Source: Glycera tridactyla (Eukaryota). Taken from it: a DNA stretch of 63,528 nt. The stretch covers positions 7,378,001 to 7,441,528 of the forward strand of contig OZ286477.1 in the NCBI GenBank assembly GCA_965644265.1, in the 5' to 3' direction. Both the position numbers and the translations under genes were made by a program. Below, one piece after another: positions 2,491 to 52,816 of the stretch. Each line of letters starts with the position of its first letter. Within the stretch, counting starts at the first letter, position 1. The notes under the pieces are model-generated. The model ran no database searches, was not told the origin of the DNA, and saw nothing but the letters and a program-made list of their open reading frames with translations.

Positions 2491-4420
2491 GTAGGTTGCT
2501 CTGCTTTGGTTTGGTTCAGGTTTGGTACTATCCCAAAAATATGATATATGTTATGTGCTTCTGAGTTATGGAAACTGAATACTCCATCCGCTGCAGAGAG
2601 TACTCTCATAAACCCCAGGTGCAAAACGATGTGAAAGCAAAAAGGCGGCCATATGGAAGTAGCTGATAGGCCAGAAACATCTGCATGTGCCTCACAAGGA
2701 GACTGCTGTTTGTCACGGATGGTACAAAACAGTGCTCCTGGAATCAGAGAGAGAAGGAGCATCGTACGCGTCCAGATGTTCATCATGAAACTGATGCACT
2801 GTATATTATTGGGCACCTCATGAGCCAGATGAAAGCGGTGCTTGTATATGGATGAGTGGGGGATACCACCTCTATCTATTTGATGATGTTCCATGTGATT
2901 GGTTATTGTTTCCTCTCTGCGAATTCGAATTCTAGATGTTTGAACTGCAGAGCAACATTCAGCAATAACTGAATAAAAGAATTTTCGGTGAAGATTGCAG
3001 AGGGTGATGAAGTCCAAAAATAAAAATGGAGAGGGAAAGATGATACATGATTATGGTCAGATATATACGAGTATTAGATATTGTGATTGGGTAATGACTA
3101 TGGTATTTGAGTTAAAAAGAACTATGTTGATATGCAATCCACCAGTACATCGAGCAATAACAATAGCCATATCTAAACAATTGTTGGATGGACAAATTTC
3201 ACGACAGATAGACAAGGACGGACTGTCACGCAGTGTCATAGGGCAAGAGTTCCTTAATGCAGCACCTCAGATCATAGCATCACCTGATACAAATTGAGTG
3301 CATGTCTGGGCAATTTCAAGGTCGCATCACTCTGTCTGCTGCGTGAACCTCGGTGATACAGCAGAACGCATGGTCGAACATTGATGCATTCCATCACAAT
3401 GGCTTCATGACACTATAACGAAAACAGTATGCAGCTGGATATGTCCATGATTTGTTTGTTGATTCGGGGTTATGGGATCTATTTGCAAGTCATAATCTAA
3501 AGGGTCATGCATCCGATGGGGTCAGGAACCATGAAGGTACATGCTGTACTCCCACAAGCACCAACATTATCGGAAACATGAGAGGGGAGAAAGTGGTATC
3601 AGCGGATAGATTGGATATACATCTACATGCTTGTCATGAATTCAGAGAAACCAATGAATGGCATTTGAAGGCATATCCAGCTATGTAAATGACCTTAGGT
3701 TGACAGTTGGTATGGAAAGCTTCAATTCCATGTAAAATCCGTCACTTGTGCTGTCCCTGGCCCAAGAAATACCTTTTCGTCAGTTCTCATCTCTCACCTT
3801 TAAACTAGGTTTACAGTAACTGGTGCTTTATTTCAATTGTACAATATTTGAATATCTTATCTGGACTACCAGAGGGGAAGTCAAGGACCACATATCACCT
3901 CTCATTGCCATAATAGTCTCTAGTAAACCAAGTCATAACCCTAGTGTTCCAAAACACATGTGCCTGATACCCGCATTTTGTATAATCATACCACTGTCAC
4001 AGGTATACCATCTGCTACCAACACAGAAGTTTCAAAAAAGAGTAAATACGATGTGATTTTTGCAGGAAATGCATTCTACTGTGAGGATGATGAAAAATTC
4101 AGGCACACCTTCACACTTCACGTTCTGAAATATTGAAATGCATCAGGTCCGGACAGAACTTACTAATTTGTCTGTCTTTTGATGGACTGTCATCTCCAAA
4201 ACAAGTTTCATGCAAATGGATCATGCAACTAATGCTATATGTATATGTCAAACGCAACACCGTGCAAAGTATACCAGATCAACCTAAAGGTGGCACCAGA
4301 AAGACCAATGAGGCTGTATTGAATAATATATGGAGATTATGAAGCTAAAAATATACGCAAATCAGAATGAATACACGGAAAGAGATTGATGATACATCAT
4401 AGTTCCTCATACTCAGTGGA

Positions 4421-4612
4421 GCCTGCCTCGGTGGCCCAGTGGTAGCATGCTTGGCCAGCATGCAATAGGTCCGGGGTTCAATCCGCGGTCCTACCGTGCA
4501 GGAACGTTTCACTCTTCATCTTCGCTCCTACGTGGCAGGTAGTCTGATTCAGCCTACTCAAGTGCAGAAAGTTGACCTAAAACCTCAACGATTCATCTCA
4601 TTTTCATTTTCA
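4421..4612 (+). mobile_element. tRNA-derived SINE
   Basis: Pol III A box TGGCCCAGTGG (~4432-4442) and B box GGTTCAATCC (~4475-4484), followed by a non-tRNA body and a simple (TTCAT)-like tail. Confidence 0.7.
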
Positions 4613-9982: not shown

Positions 9983-10262
9983 TCACAGGCACATGTCGTA
10001 TGAATTGAGATTTCATCTTAGCTATCTGTGAATTCATGGCCACCGCAGGGCGGAGGCTGGAAGCGATAACTAAGCCTGCCTCCCGAAAGCCAATGATGCT
10101 GTGTTTCGATCAATATTGTATCGGTATGATAATCGCATGTTTATTGTTGAAAATGGTCGTCTGATGCGATAGAATCAGGACGACATGCGTATGTGACACT
10201 CGAGCTGGTATCACATACACAGTTCGTTCTGTTCATGTATACCTCACATGCTTAAGCTACAA

Positions 10263-11572
10263 ACAGGCTCTGGATACAGCACATAACATTGCCTCATAGC
10301 AGGCTCTGGATACAGCACATAACATTGCCTCATGGCGAGCTCTGGATACAGCAAATAACATTGCCTCTTGGCGAGCTCTGAATACAGCATATATCATTGC
10401 CTCATAGCGGGCTCTGGACGCAGCACATAACATTGCCTCATAGCAGGCTCTGTATCCAGTGTATGGCATTGCCTCGTAGCCAGCTATGACTACAGCACAA
10501 AACATTGCCTCATAGCGGGCTCTGAATACAGCACATAATATTGCCTCATGACGGGCCCTGGATACAGCACATATCATTGCCTCATGGCAAGCTAGGGATA
10601 CAGCACATAACATTGCCTTATAGCGGGCTCTGGATACAGCACATAACATTGCCTCATGACGAGCTCTGAATACAGCACATATCATTGCCTCATAGTGGGC
10701 TCTGGATACAGCAAATACTATTGCCTCATAGCGGGCTCTGGATACAGCACATAACATTGCCTCATGGCGAGCTCTGAATACAGCATATATCATTGCCTCA
10801 TAGCGGGCTCTGGATACAGCACATAACATTGCCTTATAGCGGGCTCTGAATACAGCACATAATATTGCCTCATGGCGGGCCCTGGATACAGCACATAACA
10901 TTGCCTCATAGCGGGCTCTGGATACAGCACATATCATCGCCTCATGGCGGGCTCTGGAAACAGCACATATCATTGCCTCATGGCGAGCTCTGGATACAGC
11001 ACATAACATTGCCTCATAGTGGGCTCTGGATACAGCACATAACATTGCCTCATAGCGGGCTCTGAATACAGCACATAATATTGCCTAATGGCGGGCCCTG
11101 GATACAGCACATATCATTGCCTCATGGCAAGCTCTGGATACAGCACATAACATTGCCTCATAGCGGGCTCTGGATACAGCACATATCATTGCCTCATGGC
11201 GGGCTCTGGATACAGCAAATACTATTGCCTCATAGCGGGCTCAGGATGCAGCACATAACATTGCCTCATAGCGGGCTCTGGATACAGCACATATCATTGC
11301 CTCATGGCGAGCTCTGGATACAGCACATAACATTGCCTCATAGCGGGCTCTGGATACAGCACATAACATTGCCTCATAGCAGGCTCCGAATACAGCACAT
11401 AACATTGCCTCATAGTGGGCTCCCAATACAGCACATAAGATTGCCTCATAGCAGGCTCCGAATACAGCACATAACATTGCCTCATAGCGGGCTCTGAATA
11501 CAGCACATGAAATTGCCTCATAGTGGGCTCCAAATACAGCACATAACATCGCCTCATAGTGGGCTCCAAATA
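10263..11572. repeat. 36-bp satellite array, left part (copy A)
   Basis: Unit GATACAGCACATAACATTGCCTCATAGCGGGCTCTG, about 36 copies. Confidence 0.97.
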
Positions 11573-12411: not shown

Positions 12412-13383
12412 TACAGCACATAACATTGCCTCATAGCGGGCTCCGAAAAACAGCACATAACATTGCCTCATAGTGGGCTCCAAAATACAGCACATAACAT
12501 TGCCTCATAGCGGGCTTCAAATACAGCATAAAACATTGGCTCATAGCAGGCTCCGAATACAGCACATAACATTGCCTCATAGCAGACTCCAAATACAGCA
12601 CAACACTTTGCCTCATAGTGGGCTCCAAAATACAGCACATAACTTTGCCTCACAGAGGCTCCAAATACAGCACATAACATTGCCTCATAGAGGCTCCAAA
12701 TACAGCACATAACATTGCCCCATATTGGGCTGCAAAATACAGCCCATAACGTTGGCTCATAGTGGGCTCCAAATACAGCATATAACATTGCCTCATAGCG
12801 GGCTCCAAATACAGCACACAACATTGCCTCATAGCAGGCTACAAATACAGCCTCATAGGGGCGCCAAATACAGCACATAACATTGCCTCAAAGTGGGCTC
12901 CAAATACAGCACATAAAATTGCCTCATAGCGGGCTCTGGATACAGCATATAATATTGCCTCATAGCGGGCTCTGGAAACAGCACATAACATTGCCTCATG
13001 GCGAGCTCTGAATACAGCACACAACATTGCCTCTTAGAGGGCTCCAAATACAGCACACAACATTGCCTCATAGCGGGCTCTGGATACAGCACATAACATT
13101 GCTTCATAGCGGGCTCCAAATACAGCACATAACATTGCCTCATAGTGGGCTATGAATATAGCACATAACATCGCCTCATTGTGGGCTCTAAATACAGCAC
13201 ACAACATCGCCTCATAGCGGGCTCCAAATACAGCACATAAAATTGCCTCATAGTGGGCTCCAAAAACAGCACACAACATTGCCTCATAGCAGGCTACAAA
13301 TACAGCCTCATAGGGGCGCCAAATACAGCACATAACATTGCCTCATAGTGGGCTCCAAATACAGCACATAACATTGCCTCATT
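12412..13383. repeat. 36-bp satellite array, right part (copy A)
   Basis: Same unit, mostly the GGGCTCCAAATACAG variant, about 27 copies. Confidence 0.97.
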
Positions 13384-14433
13384 GCAGGAGAAGCTACTCA
13401 GTCTTCTGATTCACTGAGAAATCAATATCATGGCTTGTTCATTCTCAGCTTCATGCCTCAAACAAGTGAATAAATCGGCATCGAGTGCTACGTCTATCTA
13501 TGTCAAAGACTCAGCCATCTAGCAAAGGAAGTCGGACAATCACTTCCAATAGCTGCCACCTGTTGTCACTCTTTTCAGTGTGCATCCGAATGAATTGCTC
13601 TTGGCTTTCATACTGCTCGATGAAATATCTGACCAGGACCCTGAAATACATTTCAAAAAGCAGGTGTTGTCTCGACCAATAGGATAGCATATCAGATTTT
13701 CTTATTTGAAAATATTTTATTTGGTAGCATATGACAATACAATCAATTTATATGCCAACAGAACATACATACAACAGCAGATAAGTAATATTTACAATAG
13801 GGTAGTGAAAAAGTCAAGAGGATACGGATTGAGGATGTAAAATGTATATGAACATATGACAATTGATGGAATAGATGTTTATATCATACTGAACAAGAAC
13901 TGCGGCAAGCTGCATGAAAAATTCATAGGACCCGGACATTCGGGTACTCCCGCTGATGATCAGCAATTTCCGTAGTAGGCTCAATCATCCAGTCCAATGC
14001 CTGTCGTGTGCATCAGGGTCTAAAGCGATGTTATTCGATCGCATAAGATATACACTTTGGAGTTTTCATCATTCAATTATTGTTCTTCGCCCATTCTCAC
14101 AGAATTTCACTGGATTTACTCGTGCTAAGGTTTATTTAGTTGAATCTCGATCCAATGATTTTCGCCTGAACCTGCTAACCGCGGATTGTTCAATCAAAGA
14201 TGACATCGTATACGACAGCTCCACAGTCATGAAGTGAATATAGTACTACTGGGACTACTGGGACTTCAGCGGCAGTCGGCGCCCTTCAGGCACCTCCGGC
14301 CGCCTATGGTGGCCTCGGGCCCTGCGAAAAAAAAAATTGAATAGTGAAACCACCCTCCTAGTAAATTCTACTTGAATTGATCACGCTTGCAGATGTATAT
14401 AGACAAGACAATTCGACAGAATGATTGAATATA

Positions 14434-22421: not shown

Positions 22422-22655
22422 TTTCATGTTCTCCCTGACCTTTTGGTTCTCAGCACACAGCTTCAACTGTTGTCTCTATCATGCCAATTTGTATTGCACT
22501 TTCATGTTCTCCCTGACCTTTTTGTTATCAGCACACAGCTTCAACTGTTGTCTCTATCATGCCAATTTGTATTGCACTTTCATTTTCTCCCTGACCTCTT
22601 GGTTCTCAGCAAACAGCTTCAACTGTTGTCTTTATCATGCCAATTTGTATTGCAC
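22422..22655. repeat. 78-bp tandem repeat x3
   Basis: Unit TTTCATGTTCTCCCTGACCTTTTGGTTCTCAGCACACAGCTTCAACTGTTGTCTCTATCATGCCAATTTGTATTGCAC. Confidence 0.93.
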
Positions 22656-36466: not shown

Positions 36467-36781
36467 GCATTGCCTCATGGCGGGCTCTGGATACAGCATA
36501 TAATATTTCCTCAAAGCGGGCTCTGGATACAGTACAAAACATTGCCTCATAGCAGGCTCCGAATACAGCACACAACAATGCCTCATAGCAGGCTCCAAAT
36601 ATAGCACACAACATTGCCTCATAGGAGGCGCCAAATACAGCACATAACATTGCCTCATAGCAGGCTCCAAATACAGCACAAAACATCGCCTCATTGCGGG
36701 CTATGAATACAGCACATAACATTGCCTCATAGCGGGCTCCAAATGGAGCACATAACATTGCCTCATAGTGGGCTTCAAATA
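36467..36781. repeat. 36-bp satellite, left part (copy B)
   Basis: Same unit as 10263-11572, about 9 copies. Confidence 0.93.
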
Positions 36782-37590
36782 CAGTCGATCCGAGTCTAGC
36801 ATGCACCTCTACTCAGCATGACCCTCTCTTAAGTATGCACTCTCAATTCCCCCATTATATTTTCACTTAACCTGACATGTACTAGGCAGGAACTTGCCTT
36901 AGGTTGGCAGCATGCACTTTTTCAGCCTCCCTCCATGAGCACACCCCTCTTCTAAGCATGCACTCACATCTTATCCAGGGGTATGTTTGGCCAATGATTG
37001 CAATCTGTCAATGAATTATCACCACCCCATCACTATTTCCCTACCAAAAATTTAGACCAGAAGCCAGTCTTTCAGGTAATCTTCACCTTGATGCATGTCG
37101 TTTGAATTGGATACAAAATGACGAGTCCGAAGAAGAAATGCCTAACATTATCAGAGAGAGGGGAGGTGCTAAAAATTCATGAATTCTGGTATAAAAAATG
37201 GTATCATAGCTAAACAGCATGGTGTAGCGAAAACACAACTTTATTTACAGAAGAAGAGAAAGCATGAAGTGATTACAGAATAGGAACAATCAGCAAATCC
37301 TGACAGCAATCAGCAATGCAAATTTACTGGATTCGAGGATATCAATAGTCTCATATGGGCCTGGTTCCAAAATGCAACCATCTCATGGTTCTGTTTCAAC
37401 CATGTATCGATATGAATCAGTTAATCCGCTTTATTGCAGATACACAGATTTCATCTGCTCACATTTGTTCACCTTATATTCAGGCTTTTGAAAGGGTGGC
37501 CCTTTTGGTGCCTTCCACTAAGCATGCACCTCTTCTGAGCATGCAGTTTAGCCATTTCCCTCGACCGCATGTTCAGGACAGGTTCAACTG
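36782..37590 (+). mobile_element. pogo/Tigger remnant, paralog of 11573-12411
   Basis: Same TA-flanked site in the satellite, collinear sequence, ends CAGTCGATCC / GGTTCAACTG. Confidence 0.85.
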
Positions 37591-37738
37591 TACAGCACAT
37601 AACATTGCCTTATAGCGGGCTCCAAGTACAGCACATAACATTGCCTCATAGCGGGCTCCAAAATACAATACATAACATTGCCTCATAGCGGGCTCCAAAA
37701 TACAGCACATAACATTGCCTCATAGTGGGCTCCAAATA
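37591..37738. repeat. 36-bp satellite, right part (copy B)
   Basis: About 4 units. Confidence 0.9.
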
Positions 37739-39484: not shown

Positions 39485-40026
39485 GGGGTGGCTATGTTTG
39501 GTGATGTGATCCCCTCGTGGCCAGGAGAGTAGATTTTTATCAGTTGGTATTTCCAGTAGGGAGGCGCTGCTATGTTTGGTGATGTGATCCCCTCGTGGCC
39601 AGGAGAGTAGATTTTTATCAGTTGGTATTTCCAGTAGGGAGGCGCTGCTATGTTTGGTGATGTGATCCCCTCGTGGCCAGGAGAGTAGATTTTTATCAGT
39701 TGGTATCTCCAGTAGGGAGGCGCTGCTATGTTTGGTGATGTGATCCCCCTAGTGACGAGGAGAGTTGTTTTTCTATCTATTGGTATATTCAGTAGCGAGG
39801 CGCTGCTATGCTTAGTGATGTGTTCCCCCTAGTGACCAGGAGAGTTGTTTTTTCATCTATTGGTATATCCAGTAGCGAGGCGCTGTTATGCTTAGTGATT
39901 TGTTCCCCTAGTGACCAGGAGAGTTGTTTTTTTTCATCTATTGGTAAATCAAGTAGCGAGGCGCTGCTATGCTTAGTGATGTGTTCCCCCTAGTGACCAG
40001 GAGAGTTGTTTTTTTATCTATTGGTA
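39485..40026. repeat. 78/79-bp satellite, left of the LTR insertion
   Basis: Unit CCAGTAGGGAGGCGCTGCTATGTTTGGTGATGTGATCCCCTCGTGGCCAGGAGAGTAGATTTTTATCAGTTGGTATTT; period 78 (39553 to 39631). Confidence 0.95.
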
Positions 40027-43000
40027 TGTAACGCCACGTTTTTGAACATGTGACGTTTGTTAGAATAACATGAACAATATAGGGATTTCTGGTAGCGGAA
40101 TTCGCGGAATTCCTCTTTTGAGGCCCGCGGCACTAGTTTAACGCTACTAGATTGATATTTATTCCTTCCTAATCCAGAAGCATGAGATAGTTTCACTTCT
40201 ATTAGTTGAAAAACAGTGGCAATCCTGTTAGTTTTCTAATATTAGTGGTTTCACCTATCTGGTTGTTGGTGTGGCAACTAGAGTTTGAGTTACACGCAGT
40301 GGACTCGCCGTTCGCGGCGGGTGCCCAGCTTGCAGTGTTTCTAGGGTGAAACAGTAAAAATGCGATATCTCCATGAATAATGGACGTAGGAAGACCATAT
40401 TTTTACACGATATGTATCTGTATTAGGGCTGAAGATATCCTGAAGATGGGAATTGTATCTTCTGAGGCAAAATTGTTAGTCCGTGGGATAGGCCGTTTAT
40501 CGGACGGTTTTTGCCAACAGCGTTGATCACATAGCATAGTGAACGACTCCCTGAGCAGGAGGAGCTCGGAGTCGCGCAGGAGGAAAGTGATCTGCAATGT
40601 ACATGCAATGTACATGTTTTCTCAGAAAATCTTCTGTAATCGATCTAGAAAAGTCTCGAGCGAATACATTCGAGGTAGCTGACTTGGGGAACTTGACATC
40701 GCTTCTCCCGCTCTTTTTTCCCGCTCTTTGCTGGCTCTTCAGGACGGATACATAAAAGTGTTCCAGACAGGAGTTCTGGCACTTGGAAATTCTGTCCTGA
40801 AGAGTACGCACCGGAGCTGAAGGAGTCGGGAGTTGAGAACATCTAGCTTCTCCAAGATCGCTGCCTTGGACTAAAACCGATGGACTCCAATACACCGCCT
40901 TGAGCTCAACTACATCCAGTAAGTGTTCATGAGATTTAGAAATGTTTTAGGATCCATTTAGGAGGCTTTATTAGGAGTCATTTGCCCCATTTGCCCAAAT
41001 GGCCATTTTTAGTATCATGCCATTTCATGTCATCGGATCTTCCGTGTTTTGTATTGAATGTACCGTCTTTCGAGCATACGTGGTCAAAATCTAGAATTTG
41101 CATGTTTTTGGATGATTTTGGATCATTTTGGATGATAGGATTTTGTTCCATAAATGCCGTCCTGATCCAAACAAGTAATTATTAATTCTCGCGGATATTG
41201 GTAGTTCTATCTGTTTCTGTTGATTCCCTGTGCTGTTCCGGTGAATTTGGAACAAGTGGAACTGCGTGGAACTATGCCGTGTTCCCCCAGCATTGTTCCC
41301 GGTGCAGTACGCCTGTATGGGTGGAACGGGGCTATGCAGGAATTTGTAATATAGTATTTAACGCTTGGACTCACTGAATCCTCCGGGTGAGAGAAGCTGT
41401 GTGTATGAACTGCTAACACGTCTCAATATAGCTCTTACCGATCAGATTCTGATCATTTGTGTAATATTTCGGATTTCTGTGTGAATTAGATGATTGAATC
41501 ATTCAAAATTCAATTATATTCACGGGATTTCCCTATAGGAATAAAATTGTGAAAGGAATATTTCTGTAAGATCATTTTCAGTTGAAATATCAGCAGAGAC
41601 GACTGTGTCTTTTCTCTCTGAATCTGTGTGTTTTTAGACCCGGCTACTCTTCCAGTCCATGTGGGCTGAGTTGAAATGAACATGCCTATCTCGGTATGAC
41701 AATGGCAGCTCGCTGTCATGTGTACTAACCAGGTCACCGCTCAGGTGAACTCTGCTGCTGGTTTCGTAAATAGCACACACAGCTGATCTGTTTTCTTTAG
41801 CTTCCCTGATCATATGAATAGAGATCCAGTCAATCTTTTCTTTTCCGAGTGAAATTCTTTATTGAAAAACGTATTTTCATTGAAACGGCTTGTTTTGAGA
41901 AGGTAATAATCTAACGTCGTTCATATGGTGTGAAAATCTGGAATTCTTCGACGGTTAACCGATCGATTAATCGATTAATCGACCGATCAAATATGCTTCA
42001 ATTTCAGTATTCTGAATTTATTTCGGCTTGCAAAAAGCTTGTTTATAAACGATCAAGTGCTAGTTTGATGGTATTTCAATTTCCATGACCACAACTGTCG
42101 TATTTGTCAATTGAAGATCCGGTGGAATGTTTTTGGTGCTCGTACTTGTAATAGACATGTAGGGGAGACGACAAACCGAGACTTGTTTTGTTTACACGTA
42201 GTGCCTGCTTGTGATTCATGTGCCCGGCCTGAATTTAGACTTTTTCAGAGAAGGTCCACTCTGATAAGCTTGATTTCTGTCCTAAGCGCCGTATATCCTA
42301 AGCACGGACCCGTCCTAAGCTTGCTTAGTCTTGTGTAATGTCCCTGAGTCCCGTGACCTACTTTTTGAGTGAAACCTCCGTATTGAGACCAACCTGTCAC
42401 ATGTGACCACCTTGAGATTTTTGGTCTATATGATCTGCGACATCACGTTGGACTGTATTTTCGAAGGAAAATTCTTTTGAATTGATTTTAGACCTTCAAA
42501 ATGCTGCATTTGTAATTGTTTAGCTCTCGTAATGAATAAGCTGCAATGCGCTGTCATTTGAGCTCCGAGATACTTTCTGAGCGTTCTGGAATGAACAGCT
42601 GTTTCTGACTGATCGGTCAGATGTAAACAATCCGCCATTTTGGATTTCCATCCGCCACATGTATGAGCCTCACTTTGAGCTTCCGATCCACTTTACACTT
42701 TTCAACAAGTTTGAAACTTTTTCACTTTTTGATAAAAGCTTTTAGAAGCTTTAGAATTGATCGGAATTGTTTCTCGTTATGTGCGGATCGCTTTTATAGA
42801 ACTTCAGTGTGCTGGCTTTAGCGCTATTTGTGATTTGACAGCGCGAACTTAGCGCGTTGACTGAAACTTAGCACGGTGCTTACCGGACTTACTCATGGTC
42901 TTACCTAGTAAGCACATTTGTGTTTGAGGTTTGTGACATATGGGACTGCATGTAAATGCATTTCGCTCTTATATTTCTGGAATTACATGACTAATTTCGA

Positions 43001-45198
43001 CTTTAGACATTACCAAATGGCTTGAAATGAGTTGAAATTGGGATTTGGTGAATTTTAGAATTCGAACTTAGCACTGACTTGGTAGATCGGAACTTAGACC
43101 CCGCTGCTGTTGCAGCTGTGACTTAGTTCGTTCCGGTCTATGTTAGGTAGGTCATACTCACAGTGTAAGGGAGGGGGAACTTGGGTTGATTTCAGATCTT
43201 GCCTCTTGCTTCGGTGAGTGGTGACTTTATCTGATACTGTCTACAAAGACCACCTGTTCTGAATAGATTGATTTCTCTATCTTGGATTCTTAACTTAGAA
43301 TTTATTCAAATTTTTGAATTTGATTTGATGAGGACTTGACTATTTTTGATTTTGAAAAGCGTGCTTGCTCTTTTCATGCAGACAGTTGGACTTCAACTTT
43401 TTCGCTGTATTGCTGCTGCATCATGATCCCAGCTGACTGAGAGAGGACTTGGTGTGTGCACCTTTCTAGTTCATTTCCCGTGAACTTAGCTCTCTCTGAT
43501 ACAGCTGATGATTTTTTAATGCCTTGTTCATTGATAGATTAACTTAGTTGGCTCAGTGCCTGCTCCGTTGATAATGGCTTAAGTGCATTGAGATTTCTTT
43601 TCAACGGTGATACTTGCTGATTGTCTTTTGACAATCTCTTCAACTGAATGTTGAAATATTTCTAGTAACTTGATCAATGGTAACTTGTAAGTTAAATTCT
43701 TATGCTATTTAGTTAGTGGGGAATAGAGTGGGATCCTGCCTTCCCACTATAATAGATCTGGCAACTGCAAGTAACTAAGTGCACGCAACAAACATAAATA
43801 AAAACTTAGAGTTGTTTAAAGATACTTTTTGAATTAAAACTTTTCTTTATGATACTTGGACAAGTTTGTAGGAGACTTTTTTTTATCTTCTTGCAGCGAC
43901 CAACGCGTCTGAGATGTTGTGAATTGAAGAGGTGCGTACTCTTCAGACCACTCCATTCCCACGTCGCCTCCCGGGCTTATGGGATTCTACTAATATAGGC
44001 GGATATGCCTAGCCGTCGTCTACATATTCTTTAGTGTGTTAAACGCACTATACACATGTGAGATGTGTAGGACATAATCTCTTCATACGGTGAGATGCTG
44101 TTAGCTATCTTTACGAGATAAGCTACTTCACTCGAGAGGAATGATGTCTCCTCTTTACTTCTACTTCCATCTACGATACGCGTTCTAGTATCAGCTACCA
44201 TCAGTCTCTAGCTGATATGGATATATAACCAAAGTTCGTCATCACATGTGCAACTAGGTGGCCACCACTATATTAACTTTTAAAGTCGATCTTGCATCGT
44301 GGGTCTTTAACCCAAAACTTTTAAAGTCATATATCTAAAGTGCACTAACTATCTAGACACAGTGTCTTTGACTTTGTTTATATTTCTAGCTAGCTGCAGT
44401 GGCCACTTCTCAAGCGCCCAAGTCAACGATGGAACAAGAAAGAAGATAGTACTATAATAAGGTTTGAGCTCAAGCTTGTGACTATTTGAGTGTGTACTTG
44501 TATAACTCAATGAGGTACCTCACTTTGTCATTCTGCCATGAATATCCTGTGTACGTGTATGTCGTGAGTTGTATAAATCTGATATATCACTGGTATTTGT
44601 GTACCACGAGTTCATCCATACTTGTCATATATGTATATGATTTAGATCTGAATATTTGAAATGAATTTATTTATTGCATCATGAGTATAACTGACTTTTT
44701 GTCTACTTGATACTGTGATAATCTATATTGCTTCATTCAATTTATGATCTATCATTTACAACCTACCTACTATGTGAACTTTATACAAATTAAAATATGT
44801 ATCTACAACTCTATTTATGTGTCATCTTATACTTTTGAACCAACAATTGAGTTCCCTGTGTGATAGATGAGATGTCTTTATAGATTTATGGTTTCATTAG
44901 AGCTGGCAAACAATGGGATTCAACATGTAATACTGATCGCGCTTATAACATCTTATAGTACAACGTATATATTTTTGTGAACATCGATCCACAGGAGCAA
45001 TGCCATTTATTTTGACATTGGGATAAATGGGGTAAAAGCCCGGTTAACCTATACATTGCTTCCTGCTGTTCTTGATAATGGTAATTTAATCAGATATAAA
45101 CTTCTTGCCAAGGTTGCATCTTAAGGAAGAGGAGGGAATACTCCTACAAGCCTGTCGGATGACTGGTTCAATTCCATTGTCATATTGGAAGGATTACA
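40027..45198 (+). repeat. 5' LTR (5172 bp, TG...CA)
   Basis: Starts TGTAACGCC, ends GGATTACA, immediately followed by the PBS. Confidence 0.93.
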
Positions 45199-45200
45199 CA

Positions 45201-45210
45201 TGGGGGCTCG
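45201..45210 (+). promoter_or_regulatory. Primer-binding site complementary to the tRNA-Pro 3' end
   Basis: TGGGGGCTCG, 2 nt after the LTR end; matches the first 10 nt of the canonical tRNA-Pro PBS TGGGGGCTCGTCCGGGAT. Confidence 0.8.
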
Positions 45211-45229
45211 CCTTTTATACATGTACTGA

Positions 45230-47376
45230 ATCACGAGATTCAAGTCTGAGTCCTTGAGTTGTTCATTTCTCCAGTCAAAAGACTGGGAGTCACTTGAGAC
45301 ACCAGATCAAGTGGTTGAACACTCTTCAGAGCTGTCCTCTGAAACCACTCCATTGATCGAGAATGTAAATGTAGGTAGTTTAGACGCGTCAGTTTTCGGT
45401 GTCTCAAGTGACTCCCAGTCTTTTGACTGGAGAAATGAACAACTCAAGGACTCAGACTTGAATCTCGTGATTCAGTACATGTATAAAAGGCGACCTTGTA
45501 AGCCCAAAGACTTTCCTAAAAAATATAGGAAGCTTTTCTACTTCCGAGATAGGTTAGTTTTTAATTCCGAAGGGGTATTGTGCAAGAGAACTGAAATTGA
45601 AGGGTTTGAATATCTTTTAATTTTGTTGCCCCACAAGTGTTTGCCCAAAGTTTTACATGCTCTGCATGATGAGTCAGGCCATTTTGGAGTAGAGAGGGTA
45701 GTCAAATTCTTCCAGAGAAGATTTTATCTTTCTGGACATGTTAAAGCTATCACAGAATATATCTCTGCTTGCAAAGAGTGTCTATTGAAAAAGACTTCTC
45801 CCTCTAAACAAGGCATGTTAGGTGAAGTTGCAGCTCAGCGACCTTTCCAAGTCCTATCCATGGATTATCTATCCTTGGATATGGATAAGCATGGATTTGG
45901 CCATGTGTTGGTTGTAACCGATGTGTTTAGCAAATATGCTTTTGCTATACCCACCAAGAATGAGACCGCCACCACGGTCGCTAAGGCTCTAGTTGAGAAA
46001 GTTTTTGACATTTTTGGATTGCCTGAAAAGCTCTTATCTGACAGAGGCAGAAATTTTGAATCACAAGTGATTGACCAACTTTGTCAGTTACTTGGTATCA
46101 AGAAGGTGTTTACTTGCCCATATTCACCTAGGAGTGATGCCATATGTGAGAGATTCAATCGTACCTTGATTGACATGATTGGCACAATGTCCACACAGAA
46201 AATTTGCTCTTGGAGTAAATATTTAGGGCATTTGACCAACATTTATAATAGCTCAATCCACTCCTCCACCAAGTTCTCACCTTTCAACTTATATTTGGAA
46301 GGAAGAGTCGTTTACCAGTAGATGTCATGTTAGGGACTTATCCTGAGGATAGGAAATATGACAGTCTCAAACAGTACGTAGAAGCTTTGAAGTCTAGGTT
46401 GGAATTTGTTCAAACCATAGCTAGCCAGAGTCAGGACTTTTCTCACATGTCTAACAAGTATAGATATGATGAGAAGGTTAAGTCATGCATACTCAAAGTT
46501 GGTGACAAAGTTCTCGTCAAGAACGTTGGTATCAAAGGGATGCATAAGCTAGCCCCAACCTGGTTGCCCGAAGTTTATGAAATCGTAAGATTGGTAGATA
46601 ACGAGAACAGGGTGTACGAGCTAAAGAATTTGTCTAGACCAAGGAAACCTCACAGAGTTTTACATATTGATATGTTAAAATCTATTGAAGATTTTGATAG
46701 GAAATATTTGAAAACTCATGTGGTTCTAGATGAAAAGGGTATAAGTGAGGATATAGTTCAGCTCTTTGCTGAAGACACGGTGAGTAAAGATGCTGGTACA
46801 GTTATACAACCTGGCCAGAAATCTCGATACCGAACCCGTGCTTCAGAACAAAAGGGTCAATTGGAAGATAGCTCTGAAAGCTGTGATTCTGATTCATTTG
46901 AGGACGAAGAATATGTAGTGGTAACAACCCCATCTGCTAGTGATTTGTCTCCAACAGCTCAAATTGAATCTGATCATCCTGAACATGCTGAACAAGGACA
47001 AATTCAGCCAAATGTAGACCAACATTTAGGTGAGGATTTAGAGTCCACCCCAGCTAGATCTCAGTCAGAATCCAGTGTTGTGGAAGCTGGAGTTGATATT
47101 GAAGAGGCCCAAAATCCTCTTATTGAGAATTCTGATGAGATTGATGCTCATGACGAAGATACTGAGTCTGATCTGAATCCTGACACAGAATATCATTCTG
47201 CGTCAGATTCACCATTGTCTGAAGAGACTGAAGTAGTGAGTGCTTCACCACCAGGAATTGCCCGTAGAAAACCGGAAAGGGTGAGAAAACCTCCAGATAG
47301 ATGCGGTGGATATATCTCCTGGCTGTTGAAAGGAGACAGACAAACTAGATCAGCGGGACCTATTTTGGAGGTTTAG
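45230..47376 (+). CDS. Gypsy-type integrase with acidic C-terminal extension (one 1-bp frameshift at ~46294)
   Basis: HHCC finger HDESGHFG...CKEC; DD35E core MDYL, SDRGRNF, CERFNRTL. Frame-corrected FGRKSRLPVDVMLG joins ORFs 45254..46321 and 46327..47376; ends RKPERVRKPPDR. Confidence 0.88.
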
Positions 47377-47646
47377 GATCCTTTGCTTCTCATGGAATTG
47401 TAGATAAGATTTCCACCCTGGTCTCCAGTAGATCTAAAACTCTGCTTGGGAAAGGACCTTGAATTATAGTTAACATTATTTTTGAAGATAAATTTTTAGA
47501 TGGTAAGATTTATTTTTGAGAATAGGGTTGTGTTCCATATATTGTTCTTGTTATAGTTATAGGCAATAAGTGTGGGACACATAATTTTGTCTTGTTCTTT
47601 TTCGCAATGTTTGGTTGCAGCACAAACATTTATACCCCCGGGAGCA

Positions 47647-50600
47647 TGTAACGCCACGTTTTTGAACATGTGACGTTTGTTAGAATAACATGAACAATAT
47701 AGGGATTTCTGGTAGCGGAATTCGCGGAATTCCTCTTTTGAGGCCCGCGGCACTAGTTTAACGCTACTAGATTGATATTTATTCCTTCCTAATCCAGAAG
47801 CATGAGATAGTTTCACTTCTATTAGTTGAAAAACAGTGGCAATCCTGTTAGTTTTCTAATATTAGTGGTTTCACCTATCTGGTTGTTGGTGTGGCAACTA
47901 GAGTTTGAGTTACACGCAGTGGACTCGCCGTTCGCGGCGTGTGCCCAGCTTGCAGTGTTTCTAGGGTGAAACAGTAAAAATGCGATATCTCCATGAATAA
48001 TGGACGTAGGAAGACCATATTTTCACACGATATGTATCTGTATTAGGGCTAAAGATATCCCGAAGATGGGAATTGTATCTTTTGAGGCAAAATTGTTAGT
48101 CCGTGGGATAGGCCGTTTATCGGACGGTTTTTGCCAACAGCGTTGATCACATAGCATAGTGAACGACTCCCTGAGCAGGAGGAGCTCGGAGTCGCGCAGG
48201 AGGAAAGTGATCTGCAATGTACATGCAATGTACATGTTTTCTCAGAAAATCTTCTGTAATCGATCTAGAAAAGTCTCGAGCGAATACATTCGAGGTAGCT
48301 GACTTGGGGAACTTGACATCGCTTCTCCCGCTCTTTTTTCCCGCTCTTTGCTGGCTCTTCAGGACAGATACATAAAAGTGTTCCAGACAGGAGTTCTGGC
48401 ACTTGGAAATTCTGTCCTGAAGAGTACGCACAGGGGCTGAAGGAGTCGGGAGTTGAGAACATCTAGCTTCTCCAAGATCGCTGCCTTGGACTAAAACCGA
48501 TGGACTCCAATACACCGCCTTGAGCTCAACTACATCCAGTGAGTGTTCATGAGATTTAGAAATGTTTTAGGATCCATTTAGGAGGCTTTATTAGGAGTCA
48601 TTTGCCCCATTTGCCCAAATGGCCATTTTTAGTATCATGCCATTTCATGTCATCGGATCTTCCGTGTTTTGTATTGAATGTACCGTCTTTCGAGCATACG
48701 TGGTCAAAATCTAGAATTTGCATGTTTTTGGATGATTTTGGATCATTTTGGATGATAGGATTTTGTTCCATAAATGCCGTCCTGATCCAAACAAGTAATT
48801 ATTAATTCTCGCGGATATTGGTAGTTCTATCTGTTTCTGTTAATTCCCTGTGCTGTTCCGGTGAATTTGGAACAAGTGGAACTGCGTGGAACTATGCCGT
48901 GTTCCCCCAGCATTGTTCCCGGTGCAGTACGCCTGTATGGGTGGAACGGGGCTATGCAGGAATTTGTAATATAGTATTTAACACTTGGACTCACTGAATC
49001 CTCCGGGTGACAGAAGCTGTGTGTATGAACTGCTAACACGTCTCAATATAGCTCTTACCGATCAGATTCTGATCATTTGTGTAATATTTCGGATTTCTGT
49101 GTGAATTAGATGATTGAATCATTCAAAATTCAATTATATTCACGGGATTTCCCTATAGGAATAAAATTGTGAAAGGAATATTTCTGTAAGATCATTTTCA
49201 GTTGAAATATCAGCAGAGACGACTGTGTCTTTTCTCTCTGAATCTGTGTGTTTTTAGACCCGACTACTCTACCAGTCCATGTGGGCTGAGTTGAAATGAA
49301 CATGCCTATCTCGGTATGACAATGGCAGCTCGCTGTCATGTGTACTAACCAGGTCACCGCTCAGGTGAACTCTGCTGCTGGTTTCGTAAATAGCACACAC
49401 AGCTGATCTGTTTTCTTTAGCTTCCCTGATCATATGAATAGAGATCCAGTCAATCTTTTCTTTTCCGAGTGAAATTCTTTATTGAAAAACGTATTTTCAT
49501 TGAAACGGCTTGTTTTGAGAAGGTAATAATCTAACGTCGTTCATATGGTGTGAAAATCTGGAATTCTTTGACGGTTAACCGATCGATTAATCGATTAATC
49601 GACCGATCAAATATGCTTCAATTTCAGTATTCTGAATTTATTTCGGCTTGCAAAAAGCTTGTTTATAAACGATCAAGTGCTAGTTTGATGGTATTTCAAT
49701 TTCCATGACCACAACTGTCGTATTTGTCAATTGAAGATCCGGTGGAATGTTTTTGGTGCTCGTACTTGTAATAGACATGTAGGGGAGACGACAAACCGAG
49801 ACTTGTTTTGTTTACACGTAGTGCCTGCTTGTGATTCATGTGCCCGGCCTGAATTTAGACTTTTTCAGAGAAGGTCCACTCTGATAAGCTTGATTTCTGT
49901 CCTAAGCGCCGTATATCCTAAGCACGGACCCGTCCTAAGCTTGCTTAGTCTTGTGTAATGTCCCTGAGTCCCGTGACCTACTTTTTGAGTGAAACCTCCG
50001 TATTGAGACCAACCTGTCACATGTGACCACCTTGAGATTTTTGGTCTATATGATCTGCGACATCACGTTGGACTGTATTTTCGAAGGAAAATTCTTTTGA
50101 ATTGATTTTAGACCTTCAAAATGCTGCATTTGTAATTGTTTAGCTCTCGTAATGAATAAGCTGCAATGCGCTGTCATTTGAGCTCCGAGATACTTTCTGA
50201 GCGTTCTGGAATGAACAGCTGTTTCTGACTGATCGGTCAGATGTAAACAATCCGCCATTTTGGATTTCCATCCGCCACATGTATGAGCCTCACTTTGAGC
50301 TTCCGATCCACTTTACACTTTTCAACAAGTTTGAAACTTTTTCACTTTTTGATAAAAGCTTTTAGAAGCTTTAGAATTGATCGGAATTGTTTCTCGTTAT
50401 GTGCGGATCGCTTTTATAGAACTTCAGTGTGCTGGCTTTAGCGCTATTTGTGATTTGACAGCGTGAACTTAGCGCGTTGACTGGAACTTAGCACGGTGCT
50501 TACCGGACTTACTCATGGTCTTACCTAGTAAGCACATTTGTGTTTGAGGTTTGTGACATATGGGACTGCATGTAAATGCATTTCGCTCTTATATTTCTGG

Positions 50601-52816
50601 AATTACATGACTAATTTCGACTTTAGACATTACCAAATGGCTTGAAATGAGTTGAAATTGGGATTTGGTGAATTTTAGAATTCGAACTTAGCACGGACTT
50701 GGTAGATCAGATTAGACCCCGCTGCTGTTGCAGCTGTGACTTAGTTCGTTCCGGTCTATGTTAGGTAGGTCATACTCACAGTGTAAGGGAGGGGGAACTT
50801 GGGTTGATTTCAGATCTTGCCTCTTGCTTCGGTGAGTGGTGACTTTATCTGATACTGTCTACAAAGACCACCTGTTCTGAATAGATTGATTTCTCTATCT
50901 TGGATTCTTAACTTAGAATTTATTCAAATTTTTGAATTTGATTTGATGAGGACTTAACTATTTTTGATTTTGAAAAGCGTGCTTGCTCTTTTCATGCAGA
51001 CAGTTGGACTTCAACTTTTTCGCTGTATTGCTGCTGCATCATGATCCCAGCTGACTGAGAGAGGACTTGGTGTGTGCACCTTTCTAGTTCATTTCCCATG
51101 AACTTAGCTCTCTCTGATACAGCTGATGATTTTTTAATGCCTTGTTCATTGATAGATTACCTTAGTTGGCTCAGTGCCTGCTCCGTTGATAATGGCTTAA
51201 GTGCATTGAGATTTCTTTTCAACGGTGATACTTGCTGATTGTCTTTTGACAATCTCTTCAACTGAATGTTGAAATATTTCTAGTAACTTGATCAATGGTA
51301 ACTTGTAAGTTAAATTCTTATGCTATTTAGTTAGTGGGGAATAGAGTGGGATCCTGCCTTCCCACTATAATAGATCTGGCAACTGCAAGTAACTAAGTGC
51401 ACGCAACAAACATAAATAAAAACTTAGAGTTGTTTAAAGATACTTTTTGAATTAAAACTTTTCTTTATGATACTTGGACAAGTTGGTAGGAGACTTTTTT
51501 TTATCTTCTTGCAGCGACCAACGCGTCTGAGATGTCGTAAATTGAAGAGGTGCGTACTCTTCAGACCACTCCATTCCCACGTCGCCTCCCGGGCTTATGG
51601 GATTCTGCTAATATAGGCGGATATGCCTAGCCGTCGTCTACATATTCTTTAGTGTGTTAAACGCACTATACACATGTGAGATGTGTAGGACATAATCTCT
51701 TCATACGGTGAGATGCTGTTAGCTATCTTTACGAGATAAGCTACTTCACTCGAGAGGAATGATGTCTCCTCTTTACTTCTACTTCCATCTACGATACGCG
51801 TTCTAGTATCAGCTACCATCAGTCTCTAGCTGATATGGATATATAACCAAAGTTCGTCATCACATGTGCAACTAGGTGGCCACCACTATATTAACTTTTA
51901 AAGTCGATCTTGCATCGTGGGTCTTTAACCCAAAACTTTTAAAGTCATATATCTAAAGTGCACTAACTATCTAGACACAGTGTCTTTGACTTTGTTTATA
52001 TTTCTAGCTAGCTGCAGTGGCCACTTCTCAAGCGCCCAAGTCAACGATGGAACAAGAAAGAAGATAGTACTATAATAAGGTTTGAGCTCAAGCTTGTGAC
52101 TATTTGAGTGTGTACTTGTATAACTCAATGAGGTACCTCACTTTGTCATTCTGCCATGAATATCCTGTGTACGTGTATGTCGTGAGTTGTATAAATCTGA
52201 TATATCACTGGTATTTGTGTACCACGAGTTCATCCATACTTGTCATATATGTATATGATTCAGATCTGAATATTTGAAATGAATTTATTTATTGCATCAT
52301 GAGTATAACTGACTTTTTGTCTACTTGATACTGTGATAATCTATATTGCTTCATTCAATTTATGATCTATCATTTACAACCTACCTACTATGTGAACTTT
52401 ATACAAATTAAAATATGTATCTACAACTCTATTTATGTGTCATCTTATACTTTTGAACCAACAATTGAGTTCCCTGTGTGATAGATGAGATGTCTTTATA
52501 GATTTATGGTTTCATTAGAGCTGGCAAACAATGGGATTCAACATGTAATACTGATCGCGCTTATAACATCTTTTAGTACAACGTATATATTTTTGTGAAC
52601 ATCGATCCACAGGAGCAATGCCATTTATTTTGACATTGGGATAAATGGGGTAAAAGCCCGGTTAACCTATACATTGCTTCCTGCTGTTCTTGATAATGGT
52701 AATTTAATCAGATATAAACTTCTTGCCAAGGTTGCATCTTAAGGAAGAGGAGGGAATACTCCTACAAGCCTGTCGGATGACTGGTTCAATTCCATTGTCA
52801 TATTGGAAGGATTAAA
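47647..52816 (+). repeat. 3' LTR (5170 bp)
   Basis: Copy of 40027-45198 with roughly 30 differences counted by eye, including a 2-bp indel; terminal CA changed to AA. Confidence 0.93.

What the first reader, a model, noticed from the sequence alone, without database searches (positions are those of the whole stretch)
40027..52816. Young giant-LTR, integrase-only Gypsy derivative (LARD-like element in an animal)
Seen: two ~5.17-kb LTRs (81% of the element) with roughly 30 differences (~99.4% identity by eye), a 4-bp GGTA TSD, a tRNA-Pro PBS and a 2.45-kb interior. The integrase frame opens at 45230, about 20 bp after the PBS match, so gag, protease, RT and RNase H are entirely missing. Known: most metazoan Gypsy LTRs are well under 2 kb; multi-kb LTRs with a gutted interior define the plant LARD class, which has a non-coding interior. 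Inference: either a deletion derivative mobilised in trans that kept its cis signals and its own integrase, or an autonomous element deleted after insertion.
Basis: partly seen in the sequence, partly recalled or inferred. Interest (0 to 1): 0.75.

Follow-up and report, generated by a model that had tools for sequence, protein, structure and literature searches.

The report
One-off broken giant-LTR Gypsy copy
This is a real, young retrotransposon insertion with two 5.17-kb terminal repeats, but it is a single defective copy of an abundant 17-kb Ty3/Gypsy family and not a mobile LARD-like lineage; its deletion scar shows that a fold-back copying error removed gag, protease, RT and RNase H.

Summary
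The LTRs are 40027-45198 and 47647-52816 (5172 and 5170 nt), with 29 substitutions and one 2-nt indel (0.56%). A GGTA duplication sits in register inside a 79-bp satellite. The interior is 2448 bp and the integrase frame opens at 45230.

The LARD-like reading does not hold. Full-length partners with the same 5.15-5.17-kb LTR carry a 6.64-kb interior (gag with PNMA-like and CCHC parts, then RT, RNase H, integrase). The native sequence at the breakpoint occurs 4063 times in the 2.04-Gb assembly. Both junctions of this copy occur once, even with 3 mismatches.

The junction is a scar. 12-13 of the 18 PBS bases are followed by a perfect 96-nt inverted repeat (45208-45303 / 45398-45493, 94-nt loop), seeded on a 9-nt inverted repeat native to pol and joined to the PBS over 3-6 shared bases. 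About 4.29 kb is missing. The integrase frame is also broken near 46285-46321.

Best reading: two template switches, a snap-back and then a jump to the PBS. They most likely happened during the reverse transcription that made this copy (about 0.5). Repair after insertion is about 0.3.

Public contigs could not test the assembly.

The parts
39491..40026 (.). 79-bp satellite array, left flank of the insertion; its last 4 bases (40023-40026, GGTA) are the left TSD copy
   Evidence: TRF period 78-79, 6.8 copies; flank sequence
40027..45198 (+). 5' LTR, 5172 nt, TG...CA. No internal repeats, no coding signal, no Rfam family.
45201..45212 (+). Remnant of the tRNA-Pro primer binding site: 12 (perhaps 13) of 18 nt, 2 nt after the LTR. 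Bases 45208-45212/3 are shared with the inverted arm (junction microhomology).
45208..45303 (+). Left arm of a perfect 96-nt inverted repeat. 45208/13-45294 is new DNA, the reverse complement of 45407-45493. 45295-45303 (TGAGACACC) is native pol and is the snap-back seed.
45304..45397 (+). 94-nt loop between the arms; native pol sequence between RNase H and integrase
   Evidence: matches all 29 native copies with scattered substitutions, about 97-98% identity over this stretch
45398..45493 (+). Right arm of the inverted repeat; native pol sequence that served as template for the left arm
45295..46321 (+). Pol remnant, first frame: linker plus integrase zinc-binding domain (about 45629-45796) and catalytic core (about 45836-46129). 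The frame is lost through a one-base length difference near 46285 and closes at 46319-46321.
   Evidence: Pfam PF17921 and PF00665; comparison with L061 and L063
46327..47376 (+). Integrase C-terminal part and acidic/Ser-rich tail, in a different frame from the core; no chromodomain or other Pfam match
   Evidence: L063 reads the same region as one open 693-aa frame
47377..47646 (+). Non-coding 3' end of the interior up to the 3' LTR. No clear polypurine tract; only GGGAG 3 nt before the LTR.
47647..52816 (+). 3' LTR, 5170 nt, 99.44% identical to the 5' LTR
52817..54759 (.). Right TSD copy (52817-52820, GGTA) and the continuation of the 79-bp satellite (237-bp higher-order period)

Best explanation
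The element is a single, structurally unique, defective copy of an abundant autonomous Ty3/Gypsy family. Canonical members are about 17 kb: two 5.15-5.17-kb LTRs, an 18-nt tRNA-Pro PBS, and a 6.64-kb interior with gag then PR-RT-RNase H-integrase. In this copy about 4.29 kb, from PBS base 13 to a point between RNase H and integrase, was replaced by 82-87 nt of inverted pol sequence.

Shown from sequence: the scar has two junctions.
- Junction 1 is a fold-back at a 9-nt inverted repeat native to pol (45295-45303 against 45398-45406). A strand growing leftwards, with minus-strand polarity, paired its 3' end with its own earlier sequence and copied itself up to 45493.
- Junction 2 joins that new end to the PBS over 3-6 shared bases (TCG, or TCGCC(T) in the PBS variant of the nearest relatives).

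Inferred: the most likely setting is the reverse transcription that produced this very insertion. After RNase H removed the template, the minus-strand DNA self-primed. It then transferred to the PBS, on the RNA or on plus-strand strong-stop DNA. That restored a cDNA with two complete LTRs, which integrated normally with a 4-bp duplication.

The copy has no gag, no leader, a shortened PBS and a broken integrase, so it should neither move on its own nor be packaged well in trans. This fits its being a singleton. My confidence that it is a one-off template-switch deletion derivative of this family is about 0.85. My confidence that the switches happened during reverse transcription and not in chromosomal DNA is about 0.5.
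For: Family and partner:
- LTRs of 5149-5172 nt at 89-97% identity flank interiors of about 6.64 kb. LTR starts lie 11.81-11.83 kb apart at many loci.
- Locus L062 has a 475-aa gag (PNMA-like, CCHC) and an open pol with RVT_1 and RT_RNaseH. Locus L063 has an open 693-aa integrase region.
- The native breakpoint sequence occurs 4063 times and the native PBS plus leader 4507 times. On contig C1 these two sites lie 4267-4292 bp apart in many pairs.

Uniqueness: only the window matches across either junction. Each junction pattern has exactly 1 hit at up to 3 mismatches.

Scar:
- The inverted repeat is 96 nt and 100% complementary.
- 29 of 29 native copies share only the 9-nt seed and have different sequence to its left.
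- The PBS is cut at base 12/13.

Feasibility of self-priming: the nascent minus strand ending at 45295, folded as DNA, has its 3' 9 nt paired with the seed in both the MFE and the centroid structure. Self-priming of retroviral minus-strand DNA by RT after RNase H digestion is documented (PMC6088434).

For the reverse-transcription setting:
- The left breakpoint lies inside the 18-nt PBS, the natural end point of minus-strand synthesis and the site of plus-strand transfer. A random breakpoint in the 4.3-kb region would land there about 0.4% of the time (inference).
- A single 4.3-kb jump is ordinary for RT. End joining would have to remove a 4.3-kb flap (own knowledge).

Bona fide integration: intact TG..CA ends and a GGTA duplication in register with the satellite.
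Against: - No read-level confirmation. Logan contigs of four public runs carry the family but none bridges either junction, and two show the native PBS continuation instead.
- The same scar (snap-back on an inverted repeat, synthesis, then annealing at a microhomology) is the signature of SD-MMEJ/Pol-theta repair (PMC5728401, PMC2943611). It also fits replicative template switching in chromosomal DNA. The sequence alone therefore does not date the event relative to insertion.
- Perfect arm identity is uninformative. At 0.56% divergence about 0.5 differences are expected in 96 nt.
- The genome searches score only the best candidates. No further genome DNA could be fetched, so other deletion derivatives of the family could not be inspected.
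Confidence: 0.55

Rival explanations
1. Deletion after insertion. A full-length 17-kb element integrated here. Later a double-strand break or a stalled fork inside it was repaired by snap-back synthesis and microhomology joining (SD-MMEJ/Pol theta, or FoSTeS/MMBIR-type template switching). This removed 4.29 kb and left the inverted duplication.
For: The scar matches the published snap-back SD-MMEJ model point by point: an inverted primer repeat (9 nt here), templated synthesis, then a 3-6-nt microhomology on the other side (PMC5728401). The junction is unique in the assembly. The copy has also picked up a frame-breaking one-base length difference and a 2-nt LTR indel since insertion, so it is decaying.
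Against: The left breakpoint falling inside the 18-nt PBS would be a coincidence of about 0.4% (inference). The templated stretch of 82-87 nt and the 4.3-kb distance between the primer site and the microhomology are both much larger than typical SD-MMEJ/TMEJ products (own knowledge). The element is young (0.56% LTR divergence), which leaves little time for a large rearrangement.
Confidence: 0.3
2. One reading: a non-autonomous, LARD-like deletion derivative that is transcribed, packaged and mobilised in trans by full-length partners, of which this is one insertion.
For: Intact LTR ends, a TSD, a partial PBS and the region before the 3' LTR are present. Thousands of potential helper copies exist.
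Against: No second copy of either junction exists in 2.04 Gb at up to 3 mismatches, nor in one metagenome scan. The whole leader between PBS and gag, where packaging signals of retroelements normally lie (own knowledge), is deleted. The PBS is shortened to 12-13 nt. The 5' end of the RNA would be locked in a 96-bp perfect hairpin.
Confidence: 0.04
3. Assembly artefact. The deletion and palindrome were created by a chimeric or fold-back long read or a mis-join among near-identical family copies, and the real locus holds a full-length element.
For: The family has thousands of copies at 89-98% identity. No independent read support for the junction could be obtained.
Against: Both junctions use microhomologies at biologically meaningful points, the PBS and a native inverted repeat, which an assembler has no reason to pick. 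The two LTRs are each other's closest relatives (99.4% against at most 97% to any other copy), and the TSD is in register with the flanking satellite, so both ends belong to one insertion. The locus lies 7.4 Mb inside its contig.
Confidence: 0.07

Closest known systems
Ogre elements (plant Ty3/Gypsy, Tat lineage)
   Same: Ty3/Gypsy elements whose large size is due mainly to non-coding LTRs of 1.9-6.5 kb (PMC6431247). The family here has 5.15-5.17-kb LTRs on a 17-kb element.
   Different: There is no extra ORF upstream of gag: only about 430 nt separate the PBS from gag in L062. The interior is 6.6 kb against 11-13 kb. Plant Gypsy pol proteins are only 28-37% identical. The host lives in the sea. 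This is a resemblance in LTR size, not membership.
LARDs (large retrotransposon derivatives, e.g. Sukkula of barley; Kalendar et al. 2004, as cited in PMC7215508 and PMC6431247)
   Same: Multi-kb LTRs around an interior that cannot support autonomous transposition.
   Different: LARDs are large, structurally uniform groups with a conserved non-coding core that are mobilised in trans. This is a singleton whose interior is a recognisable pol remnant with integrase domains.
Retroviral and retrotransposon deletion mutants made by RT template switching, and self-priming of minus-strand DNA
   Same: After RNase H digestion, minus-strand DNA folds back, self-primes and is extended by RT (PMC6088434). 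RT also jumps between short homologies. Both steps are what the scar requires, with the right strand polarity.
   Different: Self-priming is documented there in vitro for HIV-1 strong-stop DNA, as a dead-end product. Here it would be internal, rescued by a second jump to the PBS, and preserved as an integrated copy.
Snap-back SD-MMEJ / polymerase-theta templated insertions
   Same: Inverted primer repeat, templated synthesis, then microhomology annealing across the break (PMC5728401, PMC2943611).
   Different: Published products are short (synthesis of a few to tens of nt, near the break). Here the synthesis is 82-87 nt and the deletion 4.29 kb, with one end in the PBS.
Burro/GYPSM1 giant Gypsy elements of planarians
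   Same: Animal Ty3/Gypsy elements far above the usual size, present in thousands of copies (PMC6431247).
   Different: Burro is giant through a 25-kb coding interior. This family has an ordinary interior and giant LTRs.
Mu killer of maize (own knowledge)
   Same: A rearranged transposon copy carrying an inverted duplication of element sequence, whose transcript forms a hairpin homologous to the whole family.
   Different: Mu killer is a DNA-transposon derivative with demonstrated silencing activity. Nothing here shows transcription or small RNAs.

Membership tests
Ty3/Gypsy (Metaviridae) LTR retrotransposon | Direct LTRs ending TG...CA and a short target-site duplication | tested here: met
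   5172/5170-nt LTRs, TG..CA (the 3' LTR ends AA), 4-bp GGTA duplication in register with the satellite
Ty3/Gypsy (Metaviridae) LTR retrotransposon | pol domain order PR-RT-RNase H-integrase, with Gypsy-type RT_RNaseH and H2C2 integrase domains | tested here: met
   Partner L062 has RVT_1 then RT_RNaseH_2/RT_RNaseH. PR is only weak (Asp_protease_2, E 0.064). In the window and in L063, Integrase_H2C2 plus rve lie downstream. In this copy only the integrase part remains.
Ty3/Gypsy (Metaviridae) LTR retrotransposon | gag with a CCHC nucleocapsid knuckle | tested here: met
   Met in partner L062 (PNMA-like capsid E 2e-11, zf-CCHC E 7e-4). Absent from the window copy.
Ty3/Gypsy (Metaviridae) LTR retrotransposon | PBS complementary to the 3' end of a host tRNA, next to the 5' LTR | tested here: met
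   In most native copies the 18-nt PBS is the exact complement of ...ATCCCGGACGAGCCC plus CCA. That tRNA-like 3' half occurs 792 times in the genome and 0 times in the control. Calling it tRNA-Pro rests on my own knowledge of the conserved tRNA-Pro sequence, because no locus could be cut out for ARAGORN. The window copy keeps 12-13 nt.
Ty3/Gypsy (Metaviridae) LTR retrotransposon | Polypurine tract before the 3' LTR | tested here: inconclusive
   Only GGGAG lies 3 nt before the LTR, with no long purine run.
LARD (large retrotransposon derivative) | Long (multi-kb) LTRs | tested here: met
   5.17 kb
LARD (large retrotransposon derivative) | Interior is a conserved core without gag, pol or env coding capacity | tested here: not met
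   The interior is a pol remnant with integrase zinc-binding and core domains, 97-98% identical over the 269 nt at its 5' end to the best-matching autonomous copies and about 96% over the whole pol remnant to L061/L063.
LARD (large retrotransposon derivative) | A large, structurally uniform group of copies spread by trans-mobilisation | tested here: not met
   Both junctions are unique in the 2.04-Gb assembly at up to 3 mismatches, against 4063 native sites.
Ogre / Tat lineage | Additional ORF upstream of gag and an interior above 10 kb | tested here: not met
   About 430 nt between PBS and gag in four partners; interior 6.64 kb.
Chromovirus | Chromodomain at the integrase C-terminus | tested here: not met
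   No Pfam family in the 349-aa C-terminal frame.

The most novel reading that the evidence does not exclude
If the 5' LTR drives transcription, the RNA of this one copy begins with a perfect 96-bp hairpin (predicted -215 kcal/mol, z = -21.6). The stem is 97-100% identical to the pol sequence of the roughly 4000 family members. It could then act as a natural hairpin-RNA locus, a 'Mu killer'-like trigger that feeds siRNAs against its own giant-LTR family. In that case the accidental by-product of a replication error would serve as a repressor of the family.
Probability: 0.06. Interest if true: 0.7.

Novelty: new member of a known kind. Interest (0 to 1): 0.33.

Why it matters
The claim that would have been striking, an animal counterpart of plant LARDs, is not borne out. 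Two modest points remain.

First, this genome carries a very abundant Ty3/Gypsy family: about 4000-4500 interiors, which is at most about 3% of the genome if all are full length. Its non-coding, non-repetitive LTRs keep a length of 5.15-5.17 kb across copies 89-97% identical. That size is otherwise associated with plant Ogre elements. Earlier notes of this scan report 5.1-kb and 6.2-kb LTRs elsewhere in the same genome, so oversized LTRs are a feature of this host's retroelements.

Second, the scar is an unusually legible molecular fossil of a two-step template switch, anchored at a native 9-nt inverted repeat and at the PBS. A census of such scars across the thousands of copies could measure how often reverse transcription of very long elements goes wrong in vivo. 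It could also separate copies born defective from copies that decayed after insertion. That question usually cannot be resolved copy by copy.

Tried and rejected
Attempts that failed or gave nothing:
- Fetching whole partner elements: the fetch from genomes returned only 10 kb per region. I could not inspect the 5' ends of elements L061, L063 and L067, TSDs of other copies, the second short-interior pair on C4, or run ARAGORN on a tRNA locus.
- Read support: one sequencing-run run and one read-laying run. All runs served were Logan contigs of coded marine organisms and metagenomes. None bridged 45207/45208 or 45294/45295 or the satellite/LTR joints. This gives no verdict on artefact, allele frequency or expression.
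- Organism and clade: the protein atlas on gag gave only generic gag/PNMA clusters. The word search on pol gave nearest proteins at 59-68% identity from unnamed metagenome or MAG records and 35% to an Ostrea edulis protein.
- The junction pattern was absent from JGI metagenome contigs. No pol relatives were found in IMG/VR.

Ideas rejected:
- A coding function for the LTR. The only recurrent open frame (139 aa, antisense, LTR positions 504-920) shows substitutions spread evenly over codon positions (22/19/24). There are no internal repeats and no Rfam family.
- Origin by recombination between two elements. The matching TSD in satellite register and the two LTRs being each other's nearest relatives argue against it.

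Not used: the big protein search, structure prediction and complex prediction, because nothing rested on them.

Full report
OBSERVATION

A self-comparison of the region gives one long direct repeat, 40026-45196 against 47646-52814, at 99.42% identity. Reading the ends and aligning the two copies sets the LTRs at 40027-45198 (5172 nt) and 47647-52816 (5170 nt). Both start TGTAACG. The 5' LTR ends ...TTACA and the 3' LTR ends ...TTAAA. They differ by 20 transitions, 9 transversions and one 2-nt indel, a p-distance of 0.56%.

GGTA stands on both sides, at 40023-40026 and 52817-52820. The element lies inside a 78-79-bp satellite (39491-40026 and 52817-54759). Removing the element and one GGTA restores one continuous satellite unit. 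This is therefore a genuine integration with a 4-bp duplication. The interior, 45199-47646, is 2448 bp.

WHAT THE INTERIOR HOLDS

- The frame that opens at 45230 (TGA at 45227-45229) carries Integrase_H2C2 (E 1.8e-12) and rve (E 5.9e-18). No gag, protease, RT or RNase H is present.
- The integrase is not intact. Against two other copies (L061, L063) the window differs in length by one base near 46285. The frame closes at 46319-46321, and the C-terminal part continues in another frame (46327-47376).
- L063 reads the same region as one open 693-aa frame.
- The C-terminal part has no chromodomain.

THE FAMILY

Other copies carry the same LTR:
- Nine LTRs of 5149-5172 nt are 89-97% identical to each other. 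They show no large indels and one more variable segment, at 43.8-44.8 kb.
- LTR starts lie 11.81-11.83 kb apart at many loci.
- In the two cases where both landmarks were available, the interior is about 6.64 kb.

After the 5' LTR come 2 nt, an 18-nt PBS, about 430 nt of leader, and a gag of about 475 aa (PNMA-like capsid, CCHC knuckle). A pol frame follows with a weak aspartic-protease match, RVT_1 and RT_RNaseH. With the integrase downstream, this is the Ty3/Gypsy domain order.

Copy number and primer:
- The native pol sequence at the breakpoint occurs 4063 times in the 2.04-Gb assembly (3 mismatches or fewer).
- The native PBS plus leader occurs 4507 times.
- On contig C1 the two sites lie 4267-4292 bp apart in many pairs.
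- In most copies the PBS is the exact complement of a tRNA-like 3' half plus CCA. That 3' half is present 792 times, largely in tandem arrays. By my own knowledge it is the conserved 3' end of tRNA-Pro.
- The seven copies that share the window's LTR 3' end, out of those retrieved, have a PBS variant (C instead of T at base 11).

The LTR shows no sign of function beyond being an LTR:
- no internal repeats and no similarity to the rest of the window;
- no Rfam family;
- no coding signal in its one recurrent open frame.

The nearest pol proteins in the public protein collection are only 59-68% identical and unnamed. The best named one, from Ostrea edulis, is 35% identical.

THE JUNCTION

The PBS is cut after base 12 or 13. 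From 45208 a perfect 96-nt inverted repeat begins, with arms 45208-45303 and 45398-45493 and a 94-nt loop.

In 29 of 29 native copies the sequence to the left of 45295 is different. Only TGAGACACC (45295-45303) is native, and it is complementary to GGTGTCTCA at 45398-45406. So 45208/13-45294 is new DNA, the reverse complement of 45407-45493. The new DNA is seeded on a 9-nt inverted repeat that every copy has. Its far end shares TCG (canonical PBS) or TCGCC(T) (variant PBS) with the PBS.

About 4.29 kb is missing. The first in-frame ATG is at 45479.

Both junctions are unique. Searches with 411-nt and 211-nt queries across them return only the window in full length. The two junction patterns have exactly one hit each in the genome at up to 3 mismatches, and none in JGI metagenome contigs.

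MECHANISM

The polarity of the scar is that of a strand growing from right to left, as minus-strand DNA does. Its 3' end at 45295 pairs with its own earlier sequence and copies it up to 45493. It then moves to the PBS.

Folded as single-stranded DNA, the nascent minus strand ending at 45295 has its last 9 nt paired with the seed, in both the MFE and the centroid structure. Self-priming of retroviral minus-strand DNA by RT once RNase H has removed the template is documented (PMC6088434).

A jump that lands in the PBS, on the RNA or on plus-strand strong-stop DNA, restores what is needed to finish two LTRs. This would explain why so aberrant a cDNA still integrated with perfect ends. I take this as the most likely origin (about 0.5).

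The same signature is produced in chromosomal DNA by snap-back SD-MMEJ/Pol theta repair (PMC5728401, PMC2943611) or by replicative template switching. Against that rival stand three points, all inference or own knowledge:
- the coincidence of a breakpoint inside the 18-nt PBS, about 0.4% for a random site in the deleted stretch;
- the length of the templated stretch, 82-87 nt;
- the 4.3 kb between primer site and microhomology.

I give the rival about 0.3. The perfect identity of the arms does not help, because about 0.5 differences would be expected at the LTR divergence.

CONSEQUENCES (inferred)

The copy lacks gag, the whole leader and a third of the PBS, and its integrase is broken. Its RNA would start with a 96-bp perfect hairpin (-215 kcal/mol, z = -21.6). 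It should not transpose and should be packaged poorly. That agrees with its being a singleton.

The hairpin is homologous to the pol of thousands of copies. A role as a source of small RNAs cannot be excluded, but nothing supports it yet.

WHAT COULD NOT BE DONE

- Public runs were available only as Logan contigs of coded marine organisms and metagenomes. They hold the family at 95-100% identity. None bridges a junction or the insertion site, and two show the native PBS continuation. The assembly-artefact rival (about 0.07) therefore stands untested.
- The rival is made unlikely by three observations. The breakpoints are biologically meaningful, the two LTRs are each other's nearest relatives (99.4% against at most 97% to any other copy), and the TSD is in satellite register.
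At 0.56% divergence and unknown rates of 1e-9 to 5e-9 per site per year, the insertion would be roughly 0.6-2.8 million years old (inference).

COMPARISON AND VERDICT

The element works like any internally deleted LTR retrotransposon copy. It is not a LARD. LARDs are large uniform groups with a conserved non-coding core (PMC7215508, PMC6431247), and two of their defining features were tested here and not met.

The family resembles plant Ogre elements in LTR size only (1.9-6.5 kb; PMC6431247).

Earlier notes of this scan describe related things in the same genome. One is a one-off defective copy of a 6.2-kb-LTR Gypsy family (s1-333358). Others describe 5.1-kb LTRs (s1-318288, s1-322467). Oversized LTRs and occasional broken singletons have therefore been seen before on other DNA of this genome. 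I did not test those notes.

What this locus adds is a base-by-base account of how one such copy lost its genes.

Noticed in passing
G000 contigs C17 (53387288, 53399115, 53410942), C11 (1402441, 1415855, 1429269, 1442683), C1 (PBS at 11514213, 11526036, 11537858): Three or four LTRs or PBS sites of the family lie at constant spacing (11.82 kb, or 13.41 kb on C11). These are tandem LTR-interior-LTR-interior arrays, as expected from unequal exchange between 5-kb LTRs.
   Followed up: no
G000:C4:5167921-5179007: Two LTRs of the family lie only 6739 bp apart, start to start. That implies an interior of about 1.6 kb, so this may be a second, different deletion derivative. It could not be fetched.
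   Followed up: no
G000 contig C35, from base 248 onward: Hundreds of exact copies of a tRNA-Pro-like 3' half occur in a regular tandem pattern (spacings about 384, 427, 426, 635 and 727 bp, repeating about every 2.6 kb). This looks like a large tandem tRNA gene array.
   Followed up: no
window 43777-44777 (and the same part of the 3' LTR): One 1-kb segment of the LTR is much more variable between copies (80-88% identity) than the rest (92-98%). Many genomic LTR matches stop at LTR position 4050-4350, which suggests LTR subfamilies with different 3' parts.
   Followed up: partly
window 40027-47646: CpG observed/expected is 0.79 in the LTR, 0.38 in the interior and 0.56 in the whole window. This hints that the LTR and the coding part differ in methylation history.
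   Followed up: no
L032-L038 (PBS region): All seven retrieved copies with the window's LTR 3' end carry a PBS with C in place of T at base 11 (some also T or a gap at base 13). The bulk of the family has the exact tRNA complement.
   Followed up: partly
window 10266-11566, 12412-13388, 36468-36784, 37591-37736: Arrays of a 36-bp satellite (with a 108-bp higher order) occur at four places in the window. An apparent 262-aa ORF at 10257-11045 is just this repeat read through.
   Followed up: partly
window 22422-22655, 57049-57413, 57945-58695: Further short tandem arrays with 78-bp, 42-bp and 75-bp units.
   Followed up: no
protein P0109 (cluster of P0002): A pol relative (cluster representative 59% identical) is filed in NCBI under a cyanobacterial MAG (Calothrix sp.). 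This is most likely eukaryotic retroelement DNA binned into a marine MAG.
   Followed up: no
   Followed up: no
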